A stretch of DNA of 64,000 nucleotides, from the NCBI GenBank assembly GCA_010909165.1, contig MU008154.1:310001-374000 (forward strand). The letters run 5' to 3'. The notes beneath the pieces were generated by a model, which did no database searches, had not been told where the DNA came from, and was given only the letters and a program-made list of their open reading frames with translations. Position 1 is the first letter of the stretch. The number at the start of each line of letters is the position of its first letter. Positions 2-60,932 of this stretch are shown piece after piece. Position numbers and translations under genes: made by a program. The DNA is from Anthoceros angustus. Its lineage: Eukaryota > Plantae > Anthocerotophyta.

Positions 2-1366
2 GGAAAAGCTCTTGTTCAGACTCGGGAATCCTATTATGGGAACCATGTGCATGTCAATCAAGGTAACCTGGAGCCTGTAGTCACAAAGCAACACCTGCTG
101 GAAAAGGATGATCATGGGCATTATGACAGTACTTGGGAACACGTGCACCGTCATCACGGGTCTGAAAAAGGGCGTCCTGACCTTGGCAGTGTTGGTCACG
201 ATGGCCATCACTTGCAAGCTGGGCCAGGCTTATTGCACAATCACTGTACTGCGTGCCATTCGGACCAGGAGCCCAGAGAGCGTTTTTTGTACAAGGAGCA
301 AGAAGGACAACCCCTGTCAAAAATGCTGGTCACAAAGCCAGTTCCGGAAGTCCATGAACAGTTGCATCAAAGGACTGGTGATGCAGACACTGTGAAGATT
401 TTTTCTGAGAATCAGCACTCCGATCATGGACATTGTCCTTCTTTGGACCTGATTGCAAATGGTGATCACCATGCACGGTGCAAGCATACTATGGATCACA
501 ACCATCAACACGGCTGTTCTGTTCCGCAGACACGTCGTCATCCTGGGCACCAACAAGGTGGTGATCCTGGGAGACATAGCCATATTTCTACTGCAGGTCA
601 ATGCTGTAATGCTGAGCTACACGAGAGCCGTGGGCACATTCAGGGTGATCACCACCACCATCACCACCAGGGAAGTGATATTGGCAGACATAGCCAACTT
701 TTGACTACAGACCAATGCATCATTGTCCAGTCAATTTATGATCATGGGCGCCACCATGACAATCATGGCCACCACCATGATGATCATGGCCACCAACATG
801 ATGAGCATGGCCACCATCATGATGATCACGGACACCACCATGTTGGTTGTGACCACCACAAAGACGAACATGACCATTTCAAAGGGGAAGATGACCACCA
901 CCACGATCACCACCAGCACTCTGATTTGAATATGGAAGGCATTTTTTTACATGTCTTGGCCGACACATTAGGAAGTGTTGGTGTCGTTATATCAACTGTG
1001 TTGTTGAAGTACAAGGGTTGGGTGCTAGCCGATGCAGCGTGCTCAATTTTTATCTCGGTAATGATTGTATCCACAGTAGTCCCTCTCCTTAGAAGCTCCT
1101 CAGACATTCTAGTTTTAAGGGTACCTAGGTCTGCGGAACATCGCATTAGGACTGCAATGGAGAAGCTAAGGCACATTCCTGGCTTGCACGACTGTCAGCG
1201 GGTGCATGTTTGGAGTCTGACAGATAAGGAGGTTGTAGGCAGTCTCCATGCACATGCTGGATTTGGAGCAGACAAGTATGAGCTGCGAGGTCAGGTATCC
1301 CAGGTACTGCATGCTAGTGGGATTGGAGATATTACATTTCAAATTGAAGAGGTGGATGGACTGTAA
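2..1366 (+). CDS. MTP12: Metal tolerance protein 12-like (CDF/ZnT5-7 type Zn transporter), 3' part; gene starts upstream of the window
   Basis: Frame is open from base 2. A long His-rich loop is followed by NMEGIFLHVLADTLGSVGVVIS (HxxxD TM-V site), KYKGW and a ZT_dimer-like C-terminus ending FQIEE, as in plant MTP12. Confidence 0.92.
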   Translation, partial: GKALVQTRESYYGNHVHVNQGNLEPVVTKQHLLEKDDHGHYDSTWEHVHRHHGSEKGRPDLGSVGHDGHHLQAGPGLLHNHCTACHSDQEPRERFLYKEQEGQPLSKMLVTKPVPEVHEQLHQRTGDADTVKIFSENQHSDHGHCPSLDLIANGDHHARCKHTMDHNHQHGCSVPQTRRHPGHQQGGDPGRHSHISTAGQCCNAELHESRGHIQGDHHHHHHQGSDIGRHSQLLTTDQCIIVQSIYDHGRHHDNHGHHHDDHGHQHDEHGHHHDDHGHHHVGCDHHKDEHDHFKGEDDHHHDHHQHSDLNMEGIFLHVLADTLGSVGVVISTVLLKYKGWVLADAACSIFISVMIVSTVVPLLRSSSDILVLRVPRSAEHRIRTAMEKLRHIPGLHDCQRVHVWSLTDKEVVGSLHAHAGFGADKYELRGQVSQVLHASGIGDITFQIEEVDGL

Positions 1367-25710: not shown

Positions 25711-27568
25711 AAGTGTGGGTCAGCACGGCCTGAGCCGACAAGCCCATGGATATCCCGAGTTCTCACAGGGTTGGGGGTACGACGTCCCACTGCCTCCCGA
25801 CAGAGGCGGTAGGTAGCTAACAGCAGTCAGTCTCTCATTTTTGAATCCTAGCCTCTACATCCAAACAATCCTAGACTTTGTATCATACCTGAAGAGAGCA
25901 GCAGTTGAGAGTAGGTCGTAAAATCGGTGTGTAGGCACAAACTTGTACTCTTTGCAACAGTCATTTTACTCACATGGTTCCGTCAAAAGTCTGTACAGTA
26001 TTTCGACTCTCCTCTGTACTACGTCTGTGCATGGCCCCTACATCCTGCATGTGCGGACGCAAATCCCACCAAGCACCTTGCAACATGCTCAGCCAGGATT
26101 TTTCCACAGGCAACTCACAAAACATGCTTTCGAAAATCTGCAAGCAGAAAGGAGGAGGGGGAATTCTTCCTTCGCAGTCTATGGTGTCAAGAAGACGAGT
26201 GAATCCTCGACTGTCTGGGCGCCGAAGACGAGGAAGAAGAAGAAGACGAGGCCAGCATGTTGGCCAGAAATGCTACACACACGAGCACAAAGGCCACAAA
26301 ACCCAGCAGAGAAGCCGCCAAAGCCACCGACATCGCTGCCATGGACAAATCCAGACAAAGCTGGACGAGGTCCCGAACAGTAAACATGACAGCGGAGGAT
26401 CACCCACAACCCCCAGTCCCGAACCACAGCTGCATCAGATCCCAGCACCACAATTCGATGAGCTCGCAGGCCCTGCGGAAAGAAGCAGAGGCATGACAGC
26501 GCCCTCGAGGTGAAGCAGGCAGAAGGAGATCCAAGAGACTTGCCTCTGCGTTGCTTGAGCTGGGCACTACGGTAAGCATGTGGTGCTGCTGCAGCAAGCC
26601 GAACAAGTGCTGGACCTGAAACAGGATTCCCGAGTCCCGACCGTCGGGACTCGATGCTAAGAAGGGGAGCAGCAAGCAACAGCAGGACACCTGTGCACCT
26701 AAAACCTAACACCCCCTGTAACTGCTGCTACGCGCTAACCATCACGGTTGCTGCATCAGCTGACGACTCCACCGCCAGGACCAGGATTCGCCGATTGACT
26801 CCTGACTGCAAGGTTGGAACCTGTGGTGCTGCCCTCTGATCCCACGGCCTTGTAAGGAGTAGACACATGCACAACCGACCCATTAAACCTCTCGTCTGAA
26901 CTGCGTTCCATTTCCGCACTCTCCTGCTGCCTATGTATATAAGCGCAGCAGAGCCAGCAGGCCTTGTGCGTGCGTGCTGGCGTGCGTATCTACTACAAGC
27001 ACATGCGTGTGTGTTGTGTGGGACGGGAGCACACGGAAATATGTTCAAGGACGTGGAACAGACGCAGCCACCGTTGTCTCCATGCTTCTTGGCTTCCCTA
27101 TATGAAGGGCAGGGCTGGGTGCGGTGATGCACAGCTTGCAGGGTGCTTGTGGGTAACTCCCACCTGAAGTTGTGCTGTATGCAGAGGGGAATCGCATCTG
27201 AGATGTGGAGGTAAACCCTACAAGGCCCAAGAGCGCGCACGGGAGAGAGGCTAGGCTGGGCTGGGCTGGAGCGGAATTTGAATCTTGGGAGTGGGAGAGA
27301 GCTGTGGCGGATTCGTCTAGGTCGCAAGAAATGAGAATGGGTTGTTGGTGACGAGGAGGGGAAGCAGGAGTTCCCGATTGATTAGCCGCCGAGCCGCTTG
27401 TTGCCTTTCGTGGGTGGAACAGGGAATCGGTGGTTGCTTCTGCGATGATTTGCAGGGCGGGATGTGATGGATATTTTTTGTGAGAGGGTGATGTGATTGC
27501 GGAGTGGAGGAATCGGACAGGGCAGAGCAGAGCAGACCAGACCAGACCAGACCAGACCAGCTTCAGGG

Positions 27569-29188
27569 ATGTGGCATGAGGCTCGCAGGTCGGAGAAGCG
27601 GGTCCATGAGCTCATGGATGCCGCCAAGAGGCGGGCAGAGAGGCGAGCCGTCTTTCTGTCCAGACGGCGGGGGGACCCGCAGCAGTCGCTGCGGATTGTG
27701 GGGAGCAGATGCAGGTTGCACCACGACTCCGCCTTCTACCACTCCACGCAGGACGAGCACGGGCTGATTCCCTGGAACGGGAAGGAGGACAACCTGATCG
27801 ACAGGTTCGATGGGCGGGCTCTGCTGGACTACATCTCGGAGTACAATTTGCACCATGCGCAGCGGGAGAAGACGGAGGAGGAGGAGGAGCTGGAGGAGCT
27901 GGTGAATTTCGAGAGGTACAGGGATCTCATCAAGCAAAGGAGGCAGGGGCTGACGGACGAGGAGGGGCTGGAGGAGGTGGACACGGAGTTGGAGTCCAAG
28001 TCCAGGGCTTTGCTCACCGACAAGCATGGCTCGGCTCCGGGGAAGGGGGCTGCCCACAACACTGCGCAGTTCAGCTATGCCTACGAGAACGAGCCTGCCG
28101 AGGACCCGGATCTGCTGCTGGACAGCGGGGATGAGGACGAGGAGGACGGGGAGGAGATCACCAGCAGCGAGGACAGCGAGGATGAGGAGATGGAGAACAT
28201 CGCCAAGGTGTACGGGGTGGACAGCTTCGCCAGGCTGGTGCATCTGGAGAGGAAGACCAAGGAGGAGGAGAGGAAGCAGAAGGAGGCTGCCAAGTGTGAT
28301 CTGAGCATGAAGAAGCTGAGCAGGAAGGAGAGGAGGAAGTTTGCCCAGCAGGAGAGGGAGAAGGAGAAGGAGGCTGCCAGGCTCAAGAGCACAGGGACTG
28401 CCTTTGATCCGTACAGGGAGCAGAGGGGGAGTCCGACCTACGAGAGCTACCATCGCTCCAGGAGGGAGAGGAGGAGAGGAGGGGTGGTGGGTGTGGCCAT
28501 GGGAGGCGGAGGCGGAGGTGGAGGTGGGACTGTTGAGAGCAAGGGGGATGGGGGTGGGAAGGGAAGTAGTGGGAAGGGAGAAGGGGGAGCAGCCTCGTCT
28601 ACAGGACCAGCCCAGATAGAGTACATCACGGAGTTCGAGATTGCAGATGCAGATGCTGGGAGCTCTGGGGGAGGGCCGCCCCCGCCTGTGTACTCCCCGT
28701 ATCGGGAGCCTCTGAATCGGCACCAAGGGAACCAGATCCTGGAAGCTGTGCGGAGTGATCCTGCTGCTGTGCTTGACAACAACAACGTCATCTTGCCTGC
28801 CGCGCTGTATGCAGCCTGGGATGACAAGGCTGTGGGTGCCAATGCGTCTGCTCTTGCCAAGCTGCAGAAAACCCCTGCAGCTGTGCGGGCACCTGTTAGG
28901 AAGCCCGAGGCGGAGAAGAAGGAAACTCCGCAGGAACGGCTCAAGAGGATCATGTCCAAGCAGTTGAACAAGCAGATTAAGAAGGATACCATCACTGGGA
29001 TGGCCAAGCGGCGGGAACAGGAGAAGCAGAGGCAGGAGAAGCTTGCAGAAACAAGGAGCCTTGCGAGGCGTTGGAGCAGGAGTAGGAGCCGAAGCCGGAG
29101 CCTCTCTCCATCTTGGTCTTCCAGGCGGGAAGCTCACACTTACAGACGGCATTCGAGATCACCGCCGCCTCATAGACACCATAGATAG
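27569..29188 (+). CDS. CLASRP: CLK4-associating Ser/Arg-rich splicing protein (DRY_EERY/SWAP-like domain), intronless
   Basis: MWHEARRSEKRVHELMDAAKRRAERRA, LIPWNG..DNLIDRFDGRALLD, EELVNFERYRDLIK, IEYITEF, ETPQERLKRIMSKQLNKQIKKD and an RS tail. Confidence 0.93.
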   Translation: MWHEARRSEKRVHELMDAAKRRAERRAVFLSRRRGDPQQSLRIVGSRCRLHHDSAFYHSTQDEHGLIPWNGKEDNLIDRFDGRALLDYISEYNLHHAQREKTEEEEELEELVNFERYRDLIKQRRQGLTDEEGLEEVDTELESKSRALLTDKHGSAPGKGAAHNTAQFSYAYENEPAEDPDLLLDSGDEDEEDGEEITSSEDSEDEEMENIAKVYGVDSFARLVHLERKTKEEERKQKEAAKCDLSMKKLSRKERRKFAQQEREKEKEAARLKSTGTAFDPYREQRGSPTYESYHRSRRERRRGGVVGVAMGGGGGGGGGTVESKGDGGGKGSSGKGEGGAASSTGPAQIEYITEFEIADADAGSSGGGPPPPVYSPYREPLNRHQGNQILEAVRSDPAAVLDNNNVILPAALYAAWDDKAVGANASALAKLQKTPAAVRAPVRKPEAEKKETPQERLKRIMSKQLNKQIKKDTITGMAKRREQEKQRQEKLAETRSLARRWSRSRSRSRSLSPSWSSRREAHTYRRHSRSPPPHRHHR

Positions 29189-33821: not shown

Positions 33822-34070
33822 GATTCAATTGTCCATGAATATGGATTTGTTTACTATAGATTCGAAGGTCATGAAACACCGGACACGTTAATGTGTCCGA
33901 ACGCAAAGGTTTTTTTCCGAAGACACCGGATTCAATTGTCCATGAATATGGATTTGTTTACTAAAAATTCGAAGGTTATGAAACACCGGACACGTTAATG
34001 CGTCCGAACACAAAGGTCTTTTTCCGAAGACACCGGATTCAATGGTCCACGAAAATGGACTTAATTACTC
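33822..34070. repeat. 107-bp tandem repeat, ~2.3 copies, each unit with a small hairpin
   Basis: gattcaat recurs at 33822, 33929 and 34036. Each full unit carries cggacac-gttaat-g(t/c)gtccg. Confidence 0.92.
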
Positions 34071-34445: not shown

Positions 34446-35770
34446 TCAACTGTCATCACCCGAGCTGGCAGAATCATCCTCATCGTCACTTCCACTTTCG
34501 CTACTGCTGCCACTGTCACTACTTCCACTGCTGCTGCTGCTGCTCCCACCCGAGCTTTGCGGTTGATCTTCAGTGTTTGCCTGAGAGGCTACGGCCACAG
34601 CTCCATCTCCCCCAGCCTTGTCCTCCTCTCCATCCTCCTCCTCACTCACTTCCACGTCTTCAATCTCATAGTCGCTCTCATGATCTGCTATTTCCTCCAC
34701 CACCTCCTCAATATCTACGATATCATCTATTGTGTCTTCCGCCACCTTCTTTGTTTTTGCACCATCATCCTCGTCATCATCAATATCTACTAGAGTGGGG
34801 GAGGACAGTATCTCCTGCTGCTCCTCCACAGGTGATGCTGCAGCAACAGTCACAGGCAATGATGCTGAAGGAGGTGCAGATGCTGGAGCAGCCGCCCCAC
34901 CCTTTGCCTTGCCATCCAGACTTCGCTTAGTCCCTTTCTTCTTTGGCTCTGTTGCATATCAAGTGTCAAGCTTTCTTGCAATTGGACCGACCTCTACTCA
35001 CATGCCACTCAACCGAATGGTGACATCAAAACAACCGAGTCCCTAAACTTCATTCAAGTTTCCCCAAACCAAACTCTCACCTTTCTTGGGGGCAGGCTTA
35101 TTCTTGCCAGTTTCTTTGGGAGCGACATGGACCGGAGATGCTCGCAGTTCGACAGTAGCAGATCGAGGTTCTGCAGCGGGGGCTGGAAGGATCTTCTCCA
35201 CCAATCCAGATGGCGCAGGTGCCGCTACTGCAGAGGCTGTGGCCCCTGACGAGGAAGGCCCCGGCCCTGCAGCGGTGCTCGCTGCCGCAGATTCCCCAGG
35301 CTCCCGAACGTGCCTTAAGGGCTTAATGGCTCGGTGCAGGCGCTCCAACCGGAACTCCTTCCCATCAAAGAATATCACCGCATCAATGTCCTTGCAATCC
35401 TCGCTGTTCCCCTGGAACTGGACTTTCGGTTTCCCTGCCTGATTATTGTGGAATTCCACGCTCACTTTGTTCTCTGCGCCTTTGTGCAGAGTCCCAGGCC
35501 TGCTGGTGTCTATGGAAGCTGGCAAAAAATCATCTGCAAGAAGGCAAGAAAAAATTCAATAGGTTTGCAGAAGGCAGCCAAGCTACTGCCGCAGAAACCA
35601 TAGCTTCAGCTCAACCTCTCCCTAAATTATGGAAGAGAGAATGGCTTGGGTCGCGTACATCTCAAAGAGTAGTATCGAGGTGCATCCGGGTCGGCAACGG
35701 AAGCTCCCAGCACCAGCGGGTGCCACTCATCTGCCGCAGGTGCTGTACCAGGCTCCTGCGACAGCGCCAT
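34446..35770 (-). CDS. EAF: ELL-associated factor (EAF) family transcription elongation protein; 3 exons
   Basis: YYSLR|YDFLPASID..PGTL, FQGNSED.K..DAVIFFDG..FRLERLHRAIK; acidic, Ser-rich tail. Confidence 0.9.
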
Positions 35771-35915
35771 GGCCGCCTGGCGCAGCCCCCTACGCCGGAG
35801 GACGCCCACTAGGCACTGGAGCTATAGCATGGACTTGTTCACGAGCCTGGACACCAGGCACCCGTCTTGGGCCGCGGGGTTGCCCCGATCGGATGGTTGC
35901 TTAGTGGATCGTCCG

Positions 35916-36304
35916 CATTCATTCTATGTAGGAACGCAAATGTATTTTATGTACATAGATCCTCTATATATATATGATATCAAAGAAAAGTTCTTTTAAA
36001 GAAAGAGAACAGCTTTTAAGGAAAGAGAACAGATTGGGTAAGCCTATCGGGCATCAAAGGACCGGATTAGCAGTTAGTCACCGGAAGCAGTTATCTTTTA
36101 GGTTTGTTGTCTCTCTCTCATTAGGCTCTGGCTGCAATGAGTCCTTTATAAGAAGCCCAAATATTTTCTAAAACAAAAAAGGACCTCATTCATTCTATGT
36201 AGGAATACAAATATCTTTTATATATAGATTTTCTATATCTATAATATCAAAAAAACTTTATTAAGGACATAGAATAGATTGGGTAAACCCATCGGACATC
36301 AAAA
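35916..36304. repeat. Diverged ~120-140-bp direct duplication (35916-36058 and 36187-36304)
   Basis: Both copies start cattcattctatgtaggaa and end attgggtaa.cc.atcgg.catcaaa. Confidence 0.85.
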
Positions 36305-36856
36305 GAAGATCGCATGGTGTCGCCATAAGGAGGAACGACTAAGCTCCATGTCTAAAGTCACCTACAGCATGTATGACAGGAAAATAGAAAGATCTACACA
36401 CTATTGAGGTTGTTGAGGATGCATCTCGAACTAGTGAGGGTGTTAAGGATGCATCTCCAACCCTTGGCAGGATGCATCTCCAACAATTGTCAAGTCTGCA
36501 TCTTCAGCAATCGTTGCGGTTCGTAAAATAGCCTTTGCAAGTGTCCACCGAAGGCGCTGTTTTACAGACCCTACTATACTAAGACTGATTTGGTCAGTCA
36601 AATAAATTGCTTTTATGAGAATACTAGCAATTAGTGTATTCAATCAAATTGAGCCAAATAAGCAACTGAACACGAAGCCCATAGTGGTACATGCCTCATA
36701 TGGCTGAGTTGCAGGGTAGGAGTAACTCATCTTAGAGCCTACAATTTAAGAAGTTCTAATTTGAAAGTGAGGTATCTTAGAAATTTTCCAAGTCAAAATC
36801 TCACATACCTACATAATTAGATTTATTAATTACCCTTTCATCTTGCAGTGAATAAT

Positions 36857-38059
36857 TCATACAAAGTATTTTTTCACCAAATATGCATAAAGCTCTTTAT
36901 CTAATTTATTGTAATTGAAAACTTCTTCTTTGACTTCGTAGGATAAGTTTTCTTTGTACTCAGTAAAATTGAAAAACAAAGAAGAATCTTCCGACATTTT
37001 AAATTTCTTACTAACAAGAGAATTCTGCCTACAAGTTATTTCACATTTAGCATAATCATTCATAATTGTTGTCACAGCCAATCTTGCATGTTCAGGATTT
37101 GGTATCTCTAAAAGGTATTGGTTCAATAATCTTGCAAGCTTGCGTGCAGAGTCATAGTGTTGCTCAAAAAGTCCAAAAAAGAACATATCATCTACGATTT
37201 TTTTTGCAACATCAAGAACAACTTGACCAGCAGCTGGATAATTTGTGGCACATATACGCAACGTCTTTGCATTAGCATTTATAGAATTATTTGTAAGTCC
37301 AACCACTTGAAAAGTTTGTCCATTGTGCACCAAGTCTGCAACTATGGGGTGATGAATGAATTCTTCGTAAGGCATGACAAAATAATCCAAGGTATCGTAT
37401 GTTAAAAACTCACTTCCATTAGAAGTCATGGTTCCACGTGCATGATTGATCTTATCACTTCTTACCAAAGGAATAAGATAATTCCACGGCCATACATCAA
37501 AAGCACTAGTGAAGGTATGTTGCGTTTCATTAGTTACATACCACTTCGATTGAGATGAGATTTTATCATCTTTCGACAATGCGGCTACGTATATGTTGAA
37601 GACACGTTCCAAAGGTTGATGAAATATAGACATTACTGAGGTGCTTTCCTTCCCAAGCTTTGATACCAAGCTATAGTCGTCATGGCTTATCAGTAATCGG
37701 CAATTTGGTACTTCACCCTTAGTTCGCAGATCAATATATGAATTGCTGCATTTCTCTTCTGCCGTGAATAACTTATGTAATAGGCACTGGTTTAAAGTTG
37801 TAGCACTTGTACCTGGAATATCTAGAAAAAAAAGTAATTGTTTGAGTTGATCAAATTTGTGAATATGATCAATATTAAAGCTTTTCTTCTTGATCTCGTG
37901 CGCCCATATTCCAAGTTCCTTCATACAAGTTTCATATTGGTTATCATGTGAAATATTATCTATGTCTTGGAATGGATTCCGAATCCATATAATACTTGTG
38001 GATATCACAAAACCACATGTCAAAAAAAGAAGCAAAGTCTTAATACTAATCCTCGTCAT
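36857..38059 (-). CDS. TPST: Divergent tyrosylprotein sulfotransferase (plant TPST)-like protein, intronless, 400 aa
   Basis: Collinear with plant TPST: LLFFL.IP.T, CRLLISHDDYSL.SKL.KE.TSVM, DVWPW.YL.P, HNGQTFQV.GLTNNS, VAKK.VD.M.F.GL.E, N.LD.ELY. Has an N-terminal TM anchor and no C-terminal TM. Confidence 0.85.
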   Translation of the reverse strand: MTRISIKTLLLFLTCGFVISTSIIWIRNPFQDIDNISHDNQYETCMKELGIWAHEIKKKSFNIDHIHKFDQLKQLLFFLDIPGTSATTLNQCLLHKLFTAEEKCSNSYIDLRTKGEVPNCRLLISHDDYSLVSKLGKESTSVMSIFHQPLERVFNIYVAALSKDDKISSQSKWYVTNETQHTFTSAFDVWPWNYLIPLVRSDKINHARGTMTSNGSEFLTYDTLDYFVMPYEEFIHHPIVADLVHNGQTFQVVGLTNNSINANAKTLRICATNYPAAGQVVLDVAKKIVDDMFFFGLFEQHYDSARKLARLLNQYLLEIPNPEHARLAVTTIMNDYAKCEITCRQNSLVSKKFKMSEDSSLFFNFTEYKENLSYEVKEEVFNYNKLDKELYAYLVKKYFV

Positions 38060-40225
38060 ATTAAGAAAGATAATAATCCAATATTTTTTGTTCCTACAAG
38101 AACATGTAGATTCCCCTCTGAGTAAGACCTCAAATCCTCATGATGATGATGATCTTAAGTGAATACTAAAAATAAGTCTCGTATTGTAAGGTCTTATAAA
38201 TCGTCTCAACAACTTTTCTTATCGACCTTACATAATTTATTACAGGTATGAAACCCCAAAAGTGTGATGAGAATTAATAATGAGCAAAAAATACCACTAC
38301 AGCCAAAGGCTACAAAGGTACCCAACTTATACGTTCGTAACATATTCAATTAGATACAGAAACTGGAATATATTCTTCCTTTCGTAGCAGCCGGAATAGC
38401 ACATGCCATAGGACTTAATTGGGTAAACGCGAGTTGAGACTAACAGAATTCCGAGTTAAACTAACCTATATTAAGATAACCCGGCCTAAGCCTAAGTTCA
38501 ATTGTTGGTGGGGCTTCGCATTCGGGTCCGATAACACTTGGTCACTGATGGACGTGGGGTTCGTCTTAGCAGCCTTCGGCGAGGTGCCAAAGGAAAACAA
38601 CCCTGGATGGAGCAGGGAGCTTGTGGGCATGGGCAACGCTGAAAGAATAGCTACAGCACGCGCAGGTATGAAACGACCTCCACTACGCGGCTATTCCCGC
38701 AAGTGAAGGCGGTGCAGAGAGTACAATATCCAAATAAAATGGTGGAAGCGGGCTGAGGGATAGATTTCGGACCTGTGATGGCTCTGAGGCCTTCCGCTTG
38801 TGGCGACATTGGTATGAAACTACCTCCATGCAGTTGTCGCAACTTCCAGGCTGCTGTGGGCAGTGTGAGACTTGACTGATTGGCTGTCTGGGTGGTCACT
38901 ACTTACATCATGTATGCCACATGAACGGGAAGTGGAAGCAGTGTAGTCGGAGCAGAAAGTACAATATCGTAACGATACGTGGAAGCAGACAAATGGAGAG
39001 GTTTGGCAGTGATGGAAGTGGACAGACCTGGGGGAGAACCAGACAGAGGCCTAGGGCGTCTTGAAGCTCTCCTCAAGACCTAGCTTTGGAGATCGTTGTG
39101 AACGCTTCTGAGGATATCAAAGCACGTCTTAGGGAAGTTGTGAAGCTCCCTGACCTAGCCGACGACGATTGTTTTTTGTGTTGCATTAATGCCCATGGGG
39201 GCATCGAAGGTGGTGGAAGGTGGAGGAGGCAAGGACAAGTTACATGTTAATGATATTTCGAAGCCCATCGCTGAATGCAGTTACCTTGCAGACAAGCCAA
39301 AGGTGTTACCATCAATGCTTGTCGAGGCACCGGCAGCCTTGTCACAAGCAAGAAAGCCGACGGCTCAGAGGTTGAGGGGAGCCAAGCCGTGAGTAAGAGA
39401 GCCGGAGAAGTTCGACACCTGCTTCCTGTGAGCGACCATCTGATTGTTTTCTCAACCAATCATGGAGAACAATCGTTCGGAGATCCCGTGGAGGGCATAA
39501 ACTTCATCACAGGTTTGATGGACGCCATCGTTGAGGGCTTTAAATGCCGGGCATTCTAACAACTATGATTGGCAAGGTGAAGGACATGCCGGTCTGGTAT
39601 GGATCTGAGATGACATTTTGACCAGTGTCCCGTGTCTTACAGCTCACTCACTAAAGAGCTATACTGGTCTTGACCATTATATGGTCACTTGCCTGGCTAG
39701 CGAGAGAGTTCGGTGTGGCTCTTCCCTTGTAATTCGAGATGTCTTCTAGCTAAAAACGGTGCATCATAAGCAACCACCTGCCACAAATACTGTCACTGTG
39801 AAACGAAGGCAGGCCGGGCCATCTTCATTCTCGAACCACTCGCAAATTGCATGTTGGATAAGCAAACGAGGCCGGCTTATAGGCAAGTACGGGAGAGGGA
39901 ATGTGAATCTCTAGTCTATTGAAGCAACTCCTACAGAATACTTTTCTGAAAAACATTTCTCATAGCAGATGCTTGTCGTTGAAGAGTTCAAGTCGTCGAA
40001 CTGAGGTGGGAAGAAGGGCAGTCACTGCAATGTGATGACATTCATTGCCCTTGAGCAGAACCTTCATCCGTCCCTAGGGACGGAAGTGATGAACCTAGCC
40101 GGGCCGCCTCCAAGGTGGGCGTCGCTCAGCTCAGGTCCGCTCTTCAGCGTTGGCTTTGTGGGCACTGGGCGGGAAATCGGTGATGCCACTGGGCTGTTCG
40201 CTTGTCGCAGGAAGGATTGCCCGAC

Positions 40226-40471: not shown

Positions 40472-41336
40472 CCTGCCAGGGCTGCGATCCTCTATCTTTT
40501 CCTGAGAATTATCAAAATTTTTAATTCTTACAAGAAGCTCTATTCTTTGGCTAGGTGTATAGTTGACCTTGCCTCCACTGCGAAACATCAAATTGTACGG
40601 AAATCAATTACGGATATGTTTGTACCTGCTGTGTGCATACCTATGTATAGGTTTATGTATGTGTGTGGTTTTATTGTCATTGTTGATGAGTTAATTTTTA
40701 ATAAATCTTAGTTTTTATGATATTATATATTTAAAATATCAATATTTATATTTATAAAATTAATTTGATTAATTTGTAAGAAAGTAATTGTGGTCTCCAA
40801 CCCTTGTTGGCACACTGCAAACTTGCCACATGTTAATATTGTAATGGATTGCCACAATTCCTTCATTCTTAGGTTGATACCTTTTCTTGAGGTGACCAAG
40901 ACAATTAAGCGAGCAAGCATAACAAGACCAAACCCTTCGCCAAGGCGTAGCACTATTGATTACCTTTACATTCCGATAGAAGAACTTCATTACCATCATT
41001 CGTTGTAGGAGCGAGCATCTTATATTCAAATCATAGACCATTGGTTGCCACATTGAAACTGGCAACCTGGTGTGTCACCAATCCACCCTCACCAAGAAGA
41101 CACGACAAGACCATCAAATTATCGAACGAGAGCATTGAAGAATTCAAACGGGCAGTTAACCAAGAAATAGAAAGGTTGGATCTTGCAAACACCATACCTG
41201 GGTCACGGGAAGGGATTTCATAGGCAGCCGGTTAGCTAGGAGCTCTCTTATGTAGAACACTTAAGCGGCATGCTATAAAGAGATAGTATACCCAAAAACA
41301 ACCATAGCTTCATTCAGCAAGATGGTGCAATAGCGA

Positions 41337-41508
41337 GTGTAGACTATTGAGGTAAGCAACACAATAAGCTCTCTCCCCAAATCACCCCGACCCAGAGTTG
41401 TTCACTAGTCTAATGAAGGCTTGTGTAGACTATTGAGGTAAGCAGCACAATAAGCTCTCTCCCCAAATCACCCCGACCCAGAGTTGTTCACTAGTCTAAT
41501 GAAGGCTT
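41337..41508. repeat. Near-perfect 86-bp tandem duplication
   Basis: gtgtagactattgaggtaagca...ctagtctaatgaaggctt occurs twice, differing at about 1 position. Confidence 0.95.
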
Positions 41509-42135
41509 ACAGGAAGGCATGCAAGAGCAGGAAAAGATTGTACACAAAGATGGTGACTACCAAAAAGGCCTACACTCTTATGAGCAAACCAAAACAATTA
41601 TGGGAAACCATCGGGAATAAGAGAACCACCAACCCCATAAGAGACATGGATGTATGGTACTAACAAGGAGCTTTATGAATCACCAAAACCCATTCACAAT
41701 TAGTGAGTTGGGTTACTATTTTTGAGTCATCTTTAATATTTTTTAGTTTTGGGATTCATCTATTTTTTATTAATTTGTATCATAATTAATCATAATTAAT
41801 TAATTATCCTGTTCATCATTTATCTGACCCTATTCTTTTCTTCCACCACTCAAATCATGGTTGTATAGTTATGGTAGTATTAATTATTCGACCAGGATAA
41901 AGTCAATAATTTACTCCAGTTCTAATAAAATGAGTGCACGGCCATGCTACCTTCACTTCATCATTTCATTCTACTCTCCCGCTTGTCTCTGCTATTCTTC
42001 TATAGTTCAACTAAATGCACTTCAATCCACTCTAAGTCATCGTAATTACAATTAATCAATTTATTTTTAAAAAATAATCGTATTAAACTAATCATATTAA
42101 TGGACATAATCAATTTGTGACCACCGAAGATACTT

Positions 42136-53304: not shown

Positions 53305-54358
53305 TCAAAGTAGAGCTTCTAGAGGACCTAAATAACCTTGTTGAATTCTAGCTCGAAGTAGAGCTTCTAGAGGACCTAAATCAAGACTTAAGGAAGGCGC
53401 TACTTCCTCCGGCACATTTTTGCCAAATATGTCATTACTTGTAATGTAAAGAGGGATTGAGAATGACCCATCCAACAGCTCAATTTGAGCAACATCGGTG
53501 ATTGTTAAATCTTCCCGTCTTTTGAAGAATACGGCTATATCAAACGTTGCATTAGGAGTGTATCTTGTACTTGCTCTTTTTTTCTTTTCGATGTTGATCC
53601 CTATGGCTATGCGAGCCAAGGTATCAGCTTCAACCCATTCGCTAATTTCTCTCCGGAGCTCTTCTTTGGACTCATTTTGATAAGTCACTTCAAAGACCAC
53701 AGTATGACAACTTTCAAGAGGAGTGTCTCCTGGTCCCAAAGAGAAATCAGGTTCTTTATGCCTTCTCATGAGCTTCACCCCATGAGAGAACATGACATCC
53801 ACGTAATTCATGACTCCCAAGGCTCCCATTTTCTTCAAGAGAGCAACCATCACCCTTTCTACATAATCAATGGTAAGTTCATGTACCTCCGACAAATCAC
53901 CATATAACCAAATAAATCCATTTTCACCATCACCATCTTCAGGTAATTTACTAGGCTCCCAAGCAAACTTCCATAGTGTATCTTGACTACGTCGCCACTG
54001 TTTAAAATGGGTCTTCCATACCTTATCACTCACAAGATATGGCCCTTTCTGCCAAGACAAATCCCTATGTAAGATCTGTTTATGCTCATGGACCGCACGT
54101 CTCACACCATTATCTAGATTTTCTGCACATATCAAATCTATTTTATAAATATTTAATACATTAAAAAAATCTACACTACTGATCACGATTCGTGTTAGGT
54201 TAAAAGAATACACCATGGACACAAAACAAAGAACAAGATGAAAACAACCTATCGGCCTCGGTGTAGTCTAGCTTGGCATGAAAACATGCACAATTGCTCG
54301 TAAGTGCAAATGATCTCAACATAGCTAAACTCATTCGCGAAACCTGCCTCGGCTGCAT
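53305..54358 (-). CDS. Uma2-like / PD-(D/E)XK restriction-endonuclease-fold protein; ORF 53305-54222, with a predicted 5' exon at 54358-54249
   Basis: Intact 305-codon ORF with SEVHE, KEPDFSLGP, TVVFEVTYQNES.EEL...EW and RIAIGINI, in the order of Uma2/CR-REase motifs. Optional 70-nt intron 54179-54248 (GT..CTAAC..CAG) is phase-consistent. Confidence 0.7.
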
Positions 54359-59827: not shown

Positions 59828-60932
59828 TTAGTTACACTCAGGTAGAAACCCTCGAGGATATCTTTTAATATCCTTACAATAATCATAGATCATATAATTG
59901 AGCCTCACCCAACTCAAAGCACGCACTTGTTGATTACTTAATGATGATAATAAAGGATGGTTTCCAAGAAATACATTCGATGGATTAAAGGAATAACACA
60001 CAGGTTCCATTTCAATAGATTCTCCAACAATGCAACCACTCATGATAACATTTGTATAGATAGCAGTAAAAGGAGCAAATGTATAATTCACTTTGTACTG
60101 GCCTCCATCAGTAGCCCATGAGGAGGCATCCCAAATGGTAGCATATATTGACATAGGTTTAAATGGATATTGTTTGCCTAATCCGTTAACATTTCGATAT
60201 TCTCGAATGGGAATTTCATCCACAAAAAAACTGCATACAAAGTATGGATGTCTTTAAAATTGCTATCTTTCAATAGCATTGAGTGTAAAAAACTTGAAAG
60301 CTTTTTGGGAATGTAGCTTACACTGTATGAGAGGGTGTCCACAAAATAGCATAACGATGAAAATCCAATGTTGGATCAAACCATAATCGAAACCTCTGTT
60401 CTCTCCCAATTTGAGTGCTTCCATCACCATAAATGTTGGTCTGAATGACATATTGCTCTCCAGGAATAGTTCCCAAAAATTCCAAGTCAAATTCGTCATG
60501 TCTATTTCCATACACTTCGTTGTTTGATGCCTGCAAGTGAGCACAAAAAAATTTAACTTGAAATCTATGTACATCTATATGAACACAATAATGTTTGAAA
60601 ATGTTAGTTCTTACATAAAATGTTGTCACTACACCAGCTGTGTAGTTTGCGGGTAGTTTGATTGAGGCACTAAAAAACCCGTGTAAGTAGGCATTTTTCG
60701 ACTTGATACCACTTCCTGAATATCGGTCCAAATTCAATTTTATTTGAGATGCATCTTTAGAGACTTCCTGATGATCCGAAGCCCATATATTTGAAAACTC
60801 CTTATCAAAGGTTGAAGGTTGGAAAAGATCAGAAACTATAACTCCAGGAAATGGAGGAGCTTCAAATAGTGCATGAATACGTAAGAGATATAAGCTCAAA
60901 CTCATAACCATGCACAAAATCTTCCAAGACAT
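59828..60932 (-). CDS. XTH: Xyloglucan endotransglucosylase/hydrolase (GH16), group III-like; 3 exons (60932-60615, 60530-60322, 60230-59828)
   Basis: Signal peptide, YTAGVVTTFY, HDEFDLEFLG (catalytic ExDxE), GREQRFRLWFDPT, TIWDASSWAT and YDYC.D..RYP. Confidence 0.95.

What the first reader, a model, noticed from the sequence alone, without database searches (positions are those of the whole stretch)
36857..38059. Intact intronless TPST paralog with remodelled PAPS-binding motifs and inverted membrane topology
Seen: a stop-free 400-codon, very AT-rich ORF collinear with plant TPST. The 5'-PSB loop FLHVPRTGG reads FLDIPGTSA, and the 3'-PB RDP..RV.S.Y reads HQP..RV.N.Y. It has an N-terminal TM and no C-terminal TM. 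Known: plant TPST sulfates the peptide hormones PSK, PSY and RGF/CIF; it is usually single-copy, intron-rich and C-terminally anchored, and the basic PSB residue contacts PAPS. Inference: a retroduplicate kept as a pseudo-enzyme (peptide-binding decoy or regulator) or neofunctionalised to another substrate.
Basis: partly seen in the sequence, partly recalled or inferred. Interest (0 to 1): 0.75.

Follow-up and report, generated by a model that had tools for sequence, protein, structure and literature searches.

The report
Divergent intronless TPST copy, cofactor site lost
A land plant (probably a hornwort) carries an intact, intron-free, very fast-evolved extra copy of the enzyme that sulfates peptide hormones; selection has kept its fold but it has lost the residues that hold the sulfate donor, so it is probably a non-catalytic "pseudo-enzyme" of unknown role.

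Summary
Window 36857-38059 (minus strand) is a stop-free 400-codon ORF at 34.5% GC, inside a ~2.55 kb AT-rich island in ~50% GC DNA. It is a homologue of land-plant tyrosylprotein sulfotransferase (TPST; E 1e-50, 33-44% identity). Its model matches heparan-sulfate 6-O-sulfotransferase (Z 15.5).

Both PAPS-binding motifs are altered at positions nearly invariant in about 120-140 family representatives: PRTGGRT reads PGTSATT, and RxPxxRxxSxYEF reads HQPLERVFNIYVA.

Purifying selection is supported indirectly:
- All six conserved cysteines, HDDYS and TFQV.GLTNNS are kept.
- 72% of 67 highly conserved columns are retained.
- Neutral AT-biased drift to the same divergence gives about 25 stops and 32% retention.

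Canonical TPST genes are intron-rich, so a processed-copy origin is likely, but no poly(A) tract or target-site duplication remains.

"Inverted topology" is overstated. The N-terminal hydrophobic segment sits where the canonical signal peptide does; only the C-terminal anchor is lost.

No transposon or viral hallmarks were found. A multi-exon XTH gene in the same window is equally AT-rich, so composition alone does not mean foreign origin.

The scan noted a second intronless AT-rich TPST on other DNA of this genome (s1-267935, unchecked).

Verdict: a probable pseudo-sulfotransferase retrogene, of moderate interest.

The parts
36857..38059 (-). Intact intronless 400-codon TPST-like ORF (stop codon included)
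   Evidence: ORF list. Homology to land-plant TPSTs at E 1e-50 to 5e-53. P(stop-free) ~3e-14. AF2 model pLDDT 83.9, matching HS6ST at Z 15.5.
37982..38044 (-). N-terminal hydrophobic segment (residues ~6-26), a signal peptide or signal anchor; positionally equivalent to the canonical TPST signal sequence
   Evidence: Hydropathy maximum 2.13 at residues 8-26. Most full-length canonical TPSTs checked also have an N-terminal hydrophobic stretch.
37796..37828 (-). Degenerate 5'-phosphosulfate-binding loop, residues 78-88: FLDIPGTSATT (H80D, R83G, G86A, R87T)
   Evidence: Family consensus FLH[VI]PRT[GA]GRT: His 119/123, Arg/Lys 119/123, second Gly 119/123, Arg/Lys 113/123. It aligns to FLHIQKTGGTT of HS6ST3.
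37583..37624 (-). Degenerate 3'-phosphate-binding motif, residues 146-159: FHQPLERVFNIYVA (R147H, S155N, E158V, F159A; P149, R152 and Y157 kept)
   Evidence: Family: Arg 136/138, Ser 134/138, Glu 131/138, Phe 126/138. It aligns to LRDPVSRYLSEW of HS6ST3.
37670..37684 (-). Retained HDDYS motif (residues 126-130); H126 is the presumed catalytic-base histidine (an inference)
   Evidence: His 139/143 in the family and kept in the ORF. The catalytic role is inferred from the HS 2-O/6-O sulfotransferase family, not tested.
37283..37315 (-). Retained TFQV(V)GLTNNS family signature (residues 249-259)
35900..38450 (.). AT-rich island (31-40% GC) holding only this gene, between an EAF-like gene (35043-35525, minus) and GC-rich DNA with a weak metacaspase-like fragment
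   Evidence: 200-bp GC profile. Pfam hits on the neighbours. No TE ORF, TIR or TSD.
35913..36306 (.). Imperfect ~245-271 bp direct duplication in the 3' flank of the gene, followed by 23-30 bp tandem units at 36400-36491
   Evidence: the repeat finder families D3-D6; blastn 70% identity over 149 bp.

Best explanation
The ORF is an old processed (cDNA-derived) paralogue of the land-plant Golgi tyrosylprotein sulfotransferase. It sits as a single gene in a small AT-rich patch of a probable hornwort genome.

Selection has kept it open and foldable. The N-terminal secretory signal or anchor, six conserved cysteines, the sulfotransferase core, the HDDYS histidine motif and the TFQVxGLTNNS signature are all retained.

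Four key contacts for the sulfate donor PAPS have been replaced: the basic residue and a glycine of the 5'-PSB loop, and the Arg and Ser of the 3'-PB motif. The C-terminal membrane anchor is gone.

The most likely product is a lumenal or secreted protein, or one held by an N-terminal anchor. It probably can no longer bind PAPS or transfer sulfate in the canonical way: a pseudo-sulfotransferase. It would act by binding, either to Asp-Tyr peptide precursors or to the active TPST.

Shown here: the homology, fold, motif changes, intron absence and statistical signature of constraint. Inferred: retroposition, loss of catalysis, and above all the binding or regulatory role.
For: - Intact ORF: P ~3e-14 by composition. 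Neutral AT-biased drift of a TPST cDNA to the same 33% identity gave a mean of 25 stops, with 0 of 300 replicates stop-free.
- Homology: TPST hits at E 5e-53 and 33-44% identity; named top hits are annotated land-plant TPSTs. The family profile matches HS6ST3 by sequence.
- Fold: the AF2 model (pLDDT 83.9, pTM 0.84) matches HS6ST at Z 15.5 and HS2ST at Z 14.8.
- Constraint: 48 of 67 highly conserved columns are kept (72%, against 32% mean and 48% maximum under neutral simulation). These include all six conserved Cys.
- Focused loss: 8 of the 19 lost columns lie in the two PAPS motifs (8/15 against 11/52, Fisher p = 0.023). The replaced residues are near-invariant in 123-138 family representatives, and no representative shares this combination of motif changes.
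- Processed origin: canonical genes are intron-rich. Riccia has at least 10 exon blocks over 4.6 kb; Selaginella gave 6 alignment blocks, so several exons.
- Anchor: most full-length canonical proteins checked have a signal sequence plus a C-terminal TM; the ORF has only the former. AtTPST is a type I membrane protein (PMC11534595).
- Rate: terminal branch 3.48 substitutions per site against a median of 0.59, grouped with the embryophyte-type sequences.
- Background knowledge (Kakuta/Negishi work on estrogen sulfotransferase, cited from memory): the 5'-PSB Lys/Arg and the 3'-PB Arg and Ser are the core PAPS contacts in PAPS-dependent sulfotransferases.
Against:
- No dN/dS: no relative closer than 44% identity among 1.8 billion representatives, and none in viral or metagenome contigs.
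- The host lineage itself seems absent from the protein collections. A neighbouring gene's best hit is only 58% identical, so absence of orthologues says little.
- No poly(A) tail, TSD or parent gene was seen.
- The AU test cannot exclude that the ORF branches outside the embryophyte TPST clade (p = 0.28), so the age of the duplication is open.
- The Ser/Thr-rich loop PGTSATT, together with the kept R152, Y157 and H126, could still bind a phosphate or sulfate ligand.
- The enrichment of losses in the motifs is only moderately significant.
- The AF2 model leans on an alignment of canonical TPSTs.
Confidence: 0.55

Rival explanations
1. It is still an enzyme. It would be a neofunctionalised transferase or hydrolase with a remodelled nucleotide pocket, for example using a donor without a 3'-phosphate or acting on another acceptor, and released from the Golgi membrane by loss of the C-terminal anchor.
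For: Strong constraint on the core and on the putative catalytic HDDYS histidine. The loop keeps its length and is Ser/Thr-rich (PGTSATT). P149, R152 and Y157 of the 3'-PB motif are kept. Loss of both 3'-phosphate ligands together would fit a donor lacking that phosphate (an inference).
Against: The basic 5'-PSB residue (Arg or Lys in 119/123 representatives, Lys in HS6ST3) is replaced by Gly with no basic residue nearby. From memory, no PAPS-dependent sulfotransferase is known to work without it. No other family member shows this state.
Confidence: 0.12
2. It is cargo of a mobile element or virus, or a horizontally acquired gene. On this reading the AT-rich island is foreign DNA that carried a captured, fast-evolving plant TPST cDNA. 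It would be one of many such AT-rich intronless islands in this genome.
For: Sharp compositional island holding a single intronless gene. Extreme branch length and an AT-driven amino-acid shift (FYMINK 0.34 against ~0.25). Earlier unchecked notes list many AT-rich islands with intact intronless divergent genes (LOB, PLATZ, haspin, RING-H2, thymidine kinase, a second TPST).
Against: No TE ORF, TIR, LTR, TSD or shared termini with other islands in the window. No TPST relative in 2.9 million viral contigs, tried with either query, and no PHROG hit (PHROGs covers only viruses of bacteria and archaea, so it says little about a plant or giant virus). A multi-exon host-type XTH gene in the same window has the same GC3 of 0.30, so AT-richness here is a regional or gene-class property and not a mark of foreign DNA. 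An earlier follow-up on the LOB islands also found no transposon (s1-278051).
Confidence: 0.15
3. It is a non-functional relic: a pseudogene whose frame is open by luck or because the copy is a recent duplicate of an already divergent, AT-rich parent such as the second intronless TPST elsewhere in the genome.
For: No expression evidence. The cofactor motifs are destroyed and the C-terminal ~100 residues are lost. The parent genes of this genome could not be inspected.
Against: An open frame of 400 codons at 34.5% GC has P ~3e-14, and 0 of 300 neutral simulations stayed open. Conserved columns are retained at 72% against at most 48% under neutrality. All six Cys are kept. GC1 exceeds GC2 and GC3, as in coding sequence.
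Confidence: 0.08

Closest known systems
Plant tyrosylprotein sulfotransferase (AtTPST, At1g08030; InterPro IPR010635, HS6ST/TPST family)
   Same: Clear sequence homology over residues ~40-395 (E 1e-50). Same HS6ST-like fold, N-terminal secretory signal, six conserved Cys, HDDYS and TFQVxGLTNNS signatures.
   Different: Only 33-44% identical, with a branch about six times the family median. Intronless where canonical genes have several to about ten exons or more. 5'-PSB and 3'-PB residues replaced. No C-terminal TM. TPST is reported as low-copy and conserved (PMC13074997, PMC12506393).
Heparan sulfate 6-O- and 2-O-sulfotransferases (PDB 5T03, 4NDZ, 3F5F)
   Same: Closest solved folds: Z 15.5 and 14.8 over about 230 residues. 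The motif order is collinear: 5'-PSB, 3'-PB, C-terminal helix.
   Different: 12-17% identity. Carbohydrate acceptors. Intact K-T-G-G-T-T and R..S PAPS motifs, which the ORF lacks.
SULT4A1, the orphan cytosolic sulfotransferase with a degenerate PAPS site (PDB 1ZD1)
   Same: A conserved sulfotransferase-fold protein, reported to have an impaired cofactor site and no known activity (from memory), yet kept by selection. 1ZD1 appears among the Foldseek matches.
   Different: A different subfamily, cytosolic and from animals. It is an analogy of evolutionary outcome, not relatedness.
Secretory-pathway pseudoenzymes that regulate an active paralogue (for example the Fam20A pseudokinase activating Fam20C)
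   Same: A lumenal, catalytically disabled paralogue of a Golgi modifying enzyme. It offers a mechanistic model for how a dead TPST copy could matter (from memory; inference only).
   Different: An unrelated fold. No interaction data exist for this ORF.

Membership tests
Plant TPST / HS6ST-like sulfotransferase family (IPR010635) | Significant sequence homology across the sulfotransferase domain | tested here: met
   phmmer E 5e-53 to 1e-40 against annotated TPSTs of Persea, Selaginella, Linum, Riccia and others. Pfam itself is sub-threshold even for canonical TPSTs.
Plant TPST / HS6ST-like sulfotransferase family (IPR010635) | Sulfotransferase alpha/beta fold of the HS 6-O/2-O type | tested here: met
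   AF2 model pLDDT 83.9. VIA-align Z 15.5 (5T03) and 14.8 (4NDZ) over 228-232 residues.
Plant TPST / HS6ST-like sulfotransferase family (IPR010635) | 5'-PSB loop with a basic catalytic residue (P-R/K-T-G/A-G-R/K-T) | tested here: not met
   The ORF reads PGTSATT. Arg or Lys is present in 119/123 representatives, and the second Gly in 119/123.
Plant TPST / HS6ST-like sulfotransferase family (IPR010635) | 3'-PB motif R-x-P-x-x-R-x-x-S-x-Y-E-F | tested here: not met
   The ORF reads HQPLERVFNIYVA. First Arg 136/138 and Ser 134/138 in the family; P, the second R and Y are kept.
Plant TPST / HS6ST-like sulfotransferase family (IPR010635) | Type I topology: signal peptide plus C-terminal transmembrane anchor | tested here: not met
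   An N-terminal hydrophobic segment is present. There is no C-terminal hydrophobic segment in the ORF or downstream. 8 of the 9 canonical homologues checked have one (PMC11534595).
Plant TPST / HS6ST-like sulfotransferase family (IPR010635) | PAPS-dependent sulfation of Tyr in Asp-Tyr peptides | not testable with these tools
   Needs a biochemical assay.
Retrogene (processed copy) | Lacks all introns of the parental gene family | tested here: met
   A single ORF is collinear across at least 9 intron positions of the Riccia gene and several of the Selaginella gene.
Retrogene (processed copy) | Poly(A) remnant and target-site duplications | tested here: not met
   No A or T run of 8 or more in the 3' flank. 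The best flanking direct repeat is 9 bp, which is chance level. This is expected if the copy is old.
Retrogene (processed copy) | Identifiable intron-bearing parent gene in the same genome | not testable with these tools
   Only this window is readable, and it holds no other TPST fragment. The scan notes mention only another intronless copy (s1-267935).
Pseudoenzyme kept by selection | Catalytic or cofactor residues lost while fold-determining residues are conserved | tested here: met
   72% of 67 conserved columns are kept, including six Cys. Losses are enriched in the PAPS motifs (p = 0.023). Neutral simulation gives 32% retention and about 25 stops.
Pseudoenzyme kept by selection | Expressed, with dN/dS below 1 between orthologues | not testable with these tools
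No close relative was found in any collection.
Transposon- or virus-borne cargo gene | Terminal repeats, TE proteins, viral neighbours or viral homologues | tested here: not met
   (no TIR, LTR or TE ORF). (no viral contig relative). (no PHROG hit).

The most novel reading that the evidence does not exclude
The gene is one member of a genome-wide class of intact, intronless, AT-rich, extremely fast-evolving copies of host regulators. Unchecked scan notes list LOB, PLATZ, haspin, RING-H2 and a second TPST among them. These would be generated by a common mechanism, such as a retrogene 'nursery' or an unrecognised vehicle, in a hornwort. This TPST-like protein would be an expressed, secreted pseudo-sulfotransferase that binds Asp-Tyr peptide precursors or the active TPST and so tunes sulfated-peptide signalling. 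That layer of regulation is not described in plants.
Probability: 0.15. Interest if true: 0.75.

Novelty: new variant of a known kind. Interest (0 to 1): 0.5.

Why it matters
TPST is the single gateway enzyme for the sulfated peptide hormones (PSK, PSY, RGF, CIF). It is described as low-copy and highly conserved across plants (PMC13074997, PMC12506393, PMC11534595).

A paralogue kept by selection that has specifically lost its sulfate-donor site would be the first candidate pseudo-TPST. It could reveal how peptide sulfation is regulated, or how substrates are recognised separately from catalysis.

It also belongs to a broader, unexplained pattern in this genome: AT-rich islands carrying intact, intronless, very divergent genes. 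That pattern may deserve study in its own right.

Without expression data, orthologues or an assay, the functional claim remains an inference.

Tried and rejected
- Pfam and PDB sequence search on the ORF alone: no sulfotransferase match; only two weak chance-level hits (DUF4227, E 0.05; STEAP3, E 1.6). Canonical TPSTs are sub-threshold in Pfam too, so this says nothing.
- Foldseek against PDB: weak E-values only. VIA-align on the same list gave clear Z-scores.
- Search for close relatives, for dN/dS: 1.8 billion representatives, metagenome contigs by protein and by a degenerate DNA pattern on the retained TFQV.GLTNNS motif, and viral contigs by alignment and by protein. All blank.
- P0050 (Asimina) seemed to share the FLD.P change. 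It is a singleton 342-aa model with a canonical 3'-PB motif, probably a mis-called exon and not a related clade.
- TE, TIR, TSD and poly(A) searches were negative.
- Second TPST fragment in the window: none.
- The AU test for placement inside or outside embryophytes was inconclusive (p = 0.28). The test of win + P0005 did not finish in time.
- Host identification through a neighbouring PRISE gene gave only 58% best identity, 51% to the best named hit, Sphagnum.
- Komori 2009 (PMC2736448) is not held; the topology is cited through PMC11534595.

Full report
**1. The observation**

The ORF is real. It runs from 36857 to 38059 on the minus strand, ATG to TGA, 400 codons. Its GC content is 34.5% (GC1 0.41, GC2 0.31, GC3 0.31). 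It lies in an AT-rich island of about 2.55 kb (~35900-38450). The flanks are 47-68% GC and the window averages about 50%.

At this composition a stop-free run of 400 codons has a probability near 3e-14. Five hundred shuffles of the 2.5 kb region never exceeded 158 stop-free codons.

**2. What it is related to**

Pfam gives nothing for the ORF, but canonical plant TPSTs are also below Pfam thresholds. Two searches found homologues:
- The word-indexed search found four plant proteins at 33-40% identity.
- The exhaustive HMMER search of 1.84 billion representatives found 279 relatives. None is more than 44% identical over a substantial aligned stretch; two short 90-residue matches reach 50-51%.

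Named top hits are annotated protein-tyrosine sulfotransferases or TPST-like proteins of Persea, Cinnamomum, Selaginella, Diphasiastrum, Psilotum, Linum and Riccia.

A profile of the family matches zebrafish HS6ST3 (5T03). The match includes the 5'-PSB (FLHIQKTGGTT) and 3'-PB (LRDPVSRYLSEW) segments.

An AlphaFold2 model built on a 36-sequence alignment has pLDDT 83.9 and pTM 0.84. It aligns to HS6ST at Z 15.5 (228 residues) and to HS2ST at Z 14.8. Other PAPS-dependent sulfotransferases fill the rest of the list.

**3. The motifs**

The ORF is collinear with canonical TPSTs from about residue 40 to its end. In the family, the 5'-PSB loop reads F-L-H-[VI]-P-R-T-[GA]-G-R-T. Among 123 representatives that cover it:
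- His: 119
- Arg or Lys: 119
- second Gly: 119
- following Arg or Lys: 113

The ORF reads FLDIPGTSATT.

The 3'-PB motif reads L-R-x-P-x-x-R-x-x-S-x-Y-E-F. Among 138 representatives:
- first Arg: 136
- Ser: 134
- Glu: 131
- Phe: 126

The ORF reads FHQPLERVFNIYVA. No other representative shares this combination. The one apparent look-alike, an Asimina model, has a normal 3'-PB and looks like an annotation artefact.

By contrast, HDDYS (His 139/143) and TFQVxGLTNNS are kept.

From established work on sulfotransferases (estrogen sulfotransferase Lys48, Arg130, Ser138, His108; recalled, not re-read here), the replaced positions are the main contacts of the 5'-phosphosulfate and the 3'-phosphate of PAPS. 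The retained His may correspond to the catalytic base; that equivalence is inferred.

**4. Constraint or decay**

Sixty-seven alignment columns are at least 85% conserved in 35 reference TPSTs. The ORF keeps 48 of them (72%). These include all six conserved cysteines: C45, C92, C104, C120, C270 and C339.

Of the 19 losses, 8 fall in the 15 conserved columns of the two PAPS motifs. The other 11 fall among 52 columns elsewhere (Fisher p = 0.023).

I simulated neutral AT-biased drift of a real TPST cDNA (L001) down to the observed 33% identity. The results over 300 replicates were:
- mean 25 in-frame stops, minimum 13
- no replicate stayed open
- mean retention of conserved columns 32%, maximum 48%

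So most of the divergence happened under purifying selection on the fold. The cofactor site was preferentially released.

In a maximum-likelihood tree the ORF groups with the embryophyte-type sequences. Its terminal branch is 3.48 substitutions per site, against a median of 0.59. An AU test cannot exclude a position just outside the embryophyte clade (p = 0.28), so the age of the copy is open.

The protein is shifted toward AT-encoded residues (FYMINK 0.34 against ~0.25; GARP 0.13 against ~0.21). Mutation bias therefore explains part of the divergence.

**5. Introns and origin**

The Riccia TPST gene spans 4.6 kb in at least ten exon blocks. The Selaginella gene spans 2.3 kb and gave 6 alignment blocks, so it has several exons. 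The ORF is uninterrupted across those positions, so a cDNA-mediated origin is the simplest reading.

No poly(A) remnant, target-site duplication, terminal repeat or TE protein is present. The window holds no other TPST fragment.

**6. Topology**

[quoted passage not shown] AtTPST is a type I membrane protein (PMC11534595, citing Komori 2009).

The ORF keeps the N-terminal segment (residues ~6-26, hydropathy 2.13). It ends just after the LD.ELY helix, and nothing recognisable lies downstream.

The domain would still face the lumen. It would be either soluble and secreted, or held by an uncleaved N-terminal anchor. 'Inverted topology' is therefore an overstatement.

**7. Foreign or mobile?**

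No relative was found in 2.9 million viral contigs, using either the family alignment or the ORF as query. There was no PHROG hit, though PHROGs covers only viruses of bacteria and archaea. There was no metagenome relative. The island shares no termini with other AT-rich stretches of the window.

A three-exon-or-more XTH gene at 59828-60932 (GH16 plus XET_C) has the same GC3 of 0.30. AT-richness is therefore a property of some gene neighbourhoods of this genome, not a mark of foreign DNA.

Other notes of this scan (unchecked leads) report many AT-rich islands with intact, intronless, divergent genes. They include a second TPST on another piece (s1-267935). They call the host a probable hornwort.

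A neighbouring PRISE gene has a best hit of 58%, and of 51% to Sphagnum.

**8. Mechanism proposed**

This is a lumenal or secreted TPST-fold protein that no longer binds PAPS in the canonical way: a pseudo-sulfotransferase. It would act by binding peptide precursors or the active enzyme.
- Shown: homology, fold, motif loss, constraint and intron absence.
- Inferred: retroposition, catalytic death, the binding role.

**9. Comparison and novelty**

The literature held here describes plant TPST as low-copy and conserved (PMC13074997, PMC12506393). None of the papers searched or read here describes a TPST paralogue with a degenerate cofactor site.

Analogous outcomes are SULT4A1 and secretory pseudoenzymes such as Fam20A (from memory).

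I rate it a new variant of a known kind, of moderate interest. It would become more interesting if it proves to be expressed and conserved among hornworts.

**10. Procedure notes**

Noticed in passing
window 59828-60932 (minus): A multi-exon xyloglucan endotransglucosylase/hydrolase gene (GH16 plus XET_C) lies in another AT-rich stretch and has GC3 0.30. That is the same as the intronless TPST-like ORF, and far from the 0.44-0.74 of neighbouring genes. Gene composition in this genome looks bimodal, independent of intron content.
   Followed up: partly
window 53305-54222 (minus): An intact 305-aa AT-rich ORF (GC 0.40, GC3 0.33), already flagged by the scan as nuclease-like (s1-324594). It has no Pfam or PHROG match at E <= 0.01.
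   Followed up: partly
window 41337-41508 and 33822-34035: Two-copy tandem repeats: 86 bp at 99% identity inside a non-coding AT-rich stretch (40500-42100), and 107 bp at 94%.
   Followed up: no
window 35913-36306 and 36400-36491: The 3' flank of the TPST-like gene holds an imperfect ~250 bp direct duplication (70-85% identity) and short 23-30 bp tandem units containing GGATGCATCTC.
   Followed up: no
window 27497-29188 (plus) / 27563-29152 (minus): A GC-rich 563-aa ORF (charged, Arg/Ser-rich tail) is mirrored by a 529-aa antisense ORF. This is probably a GC-rich shadow frame.
   Followed up: no
window 47-1366 (plus): An extremely His-rich ORF ending in a cation-efflux-like C-terminus (a metal-tolerance-protein-like gene, judged by eye), probably an exon run-through.
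   Followed up: no
genome-wide (scan notes): Many first-stage notes on this genome describe AT-rich islands with intact, intronless, highly divergent copies of plant genes (LOB, PLATZ, haspin kinase, RING-H2, LKR, thymidine kinase, a second TPST). A common cause has not been established.
   Followed up: no
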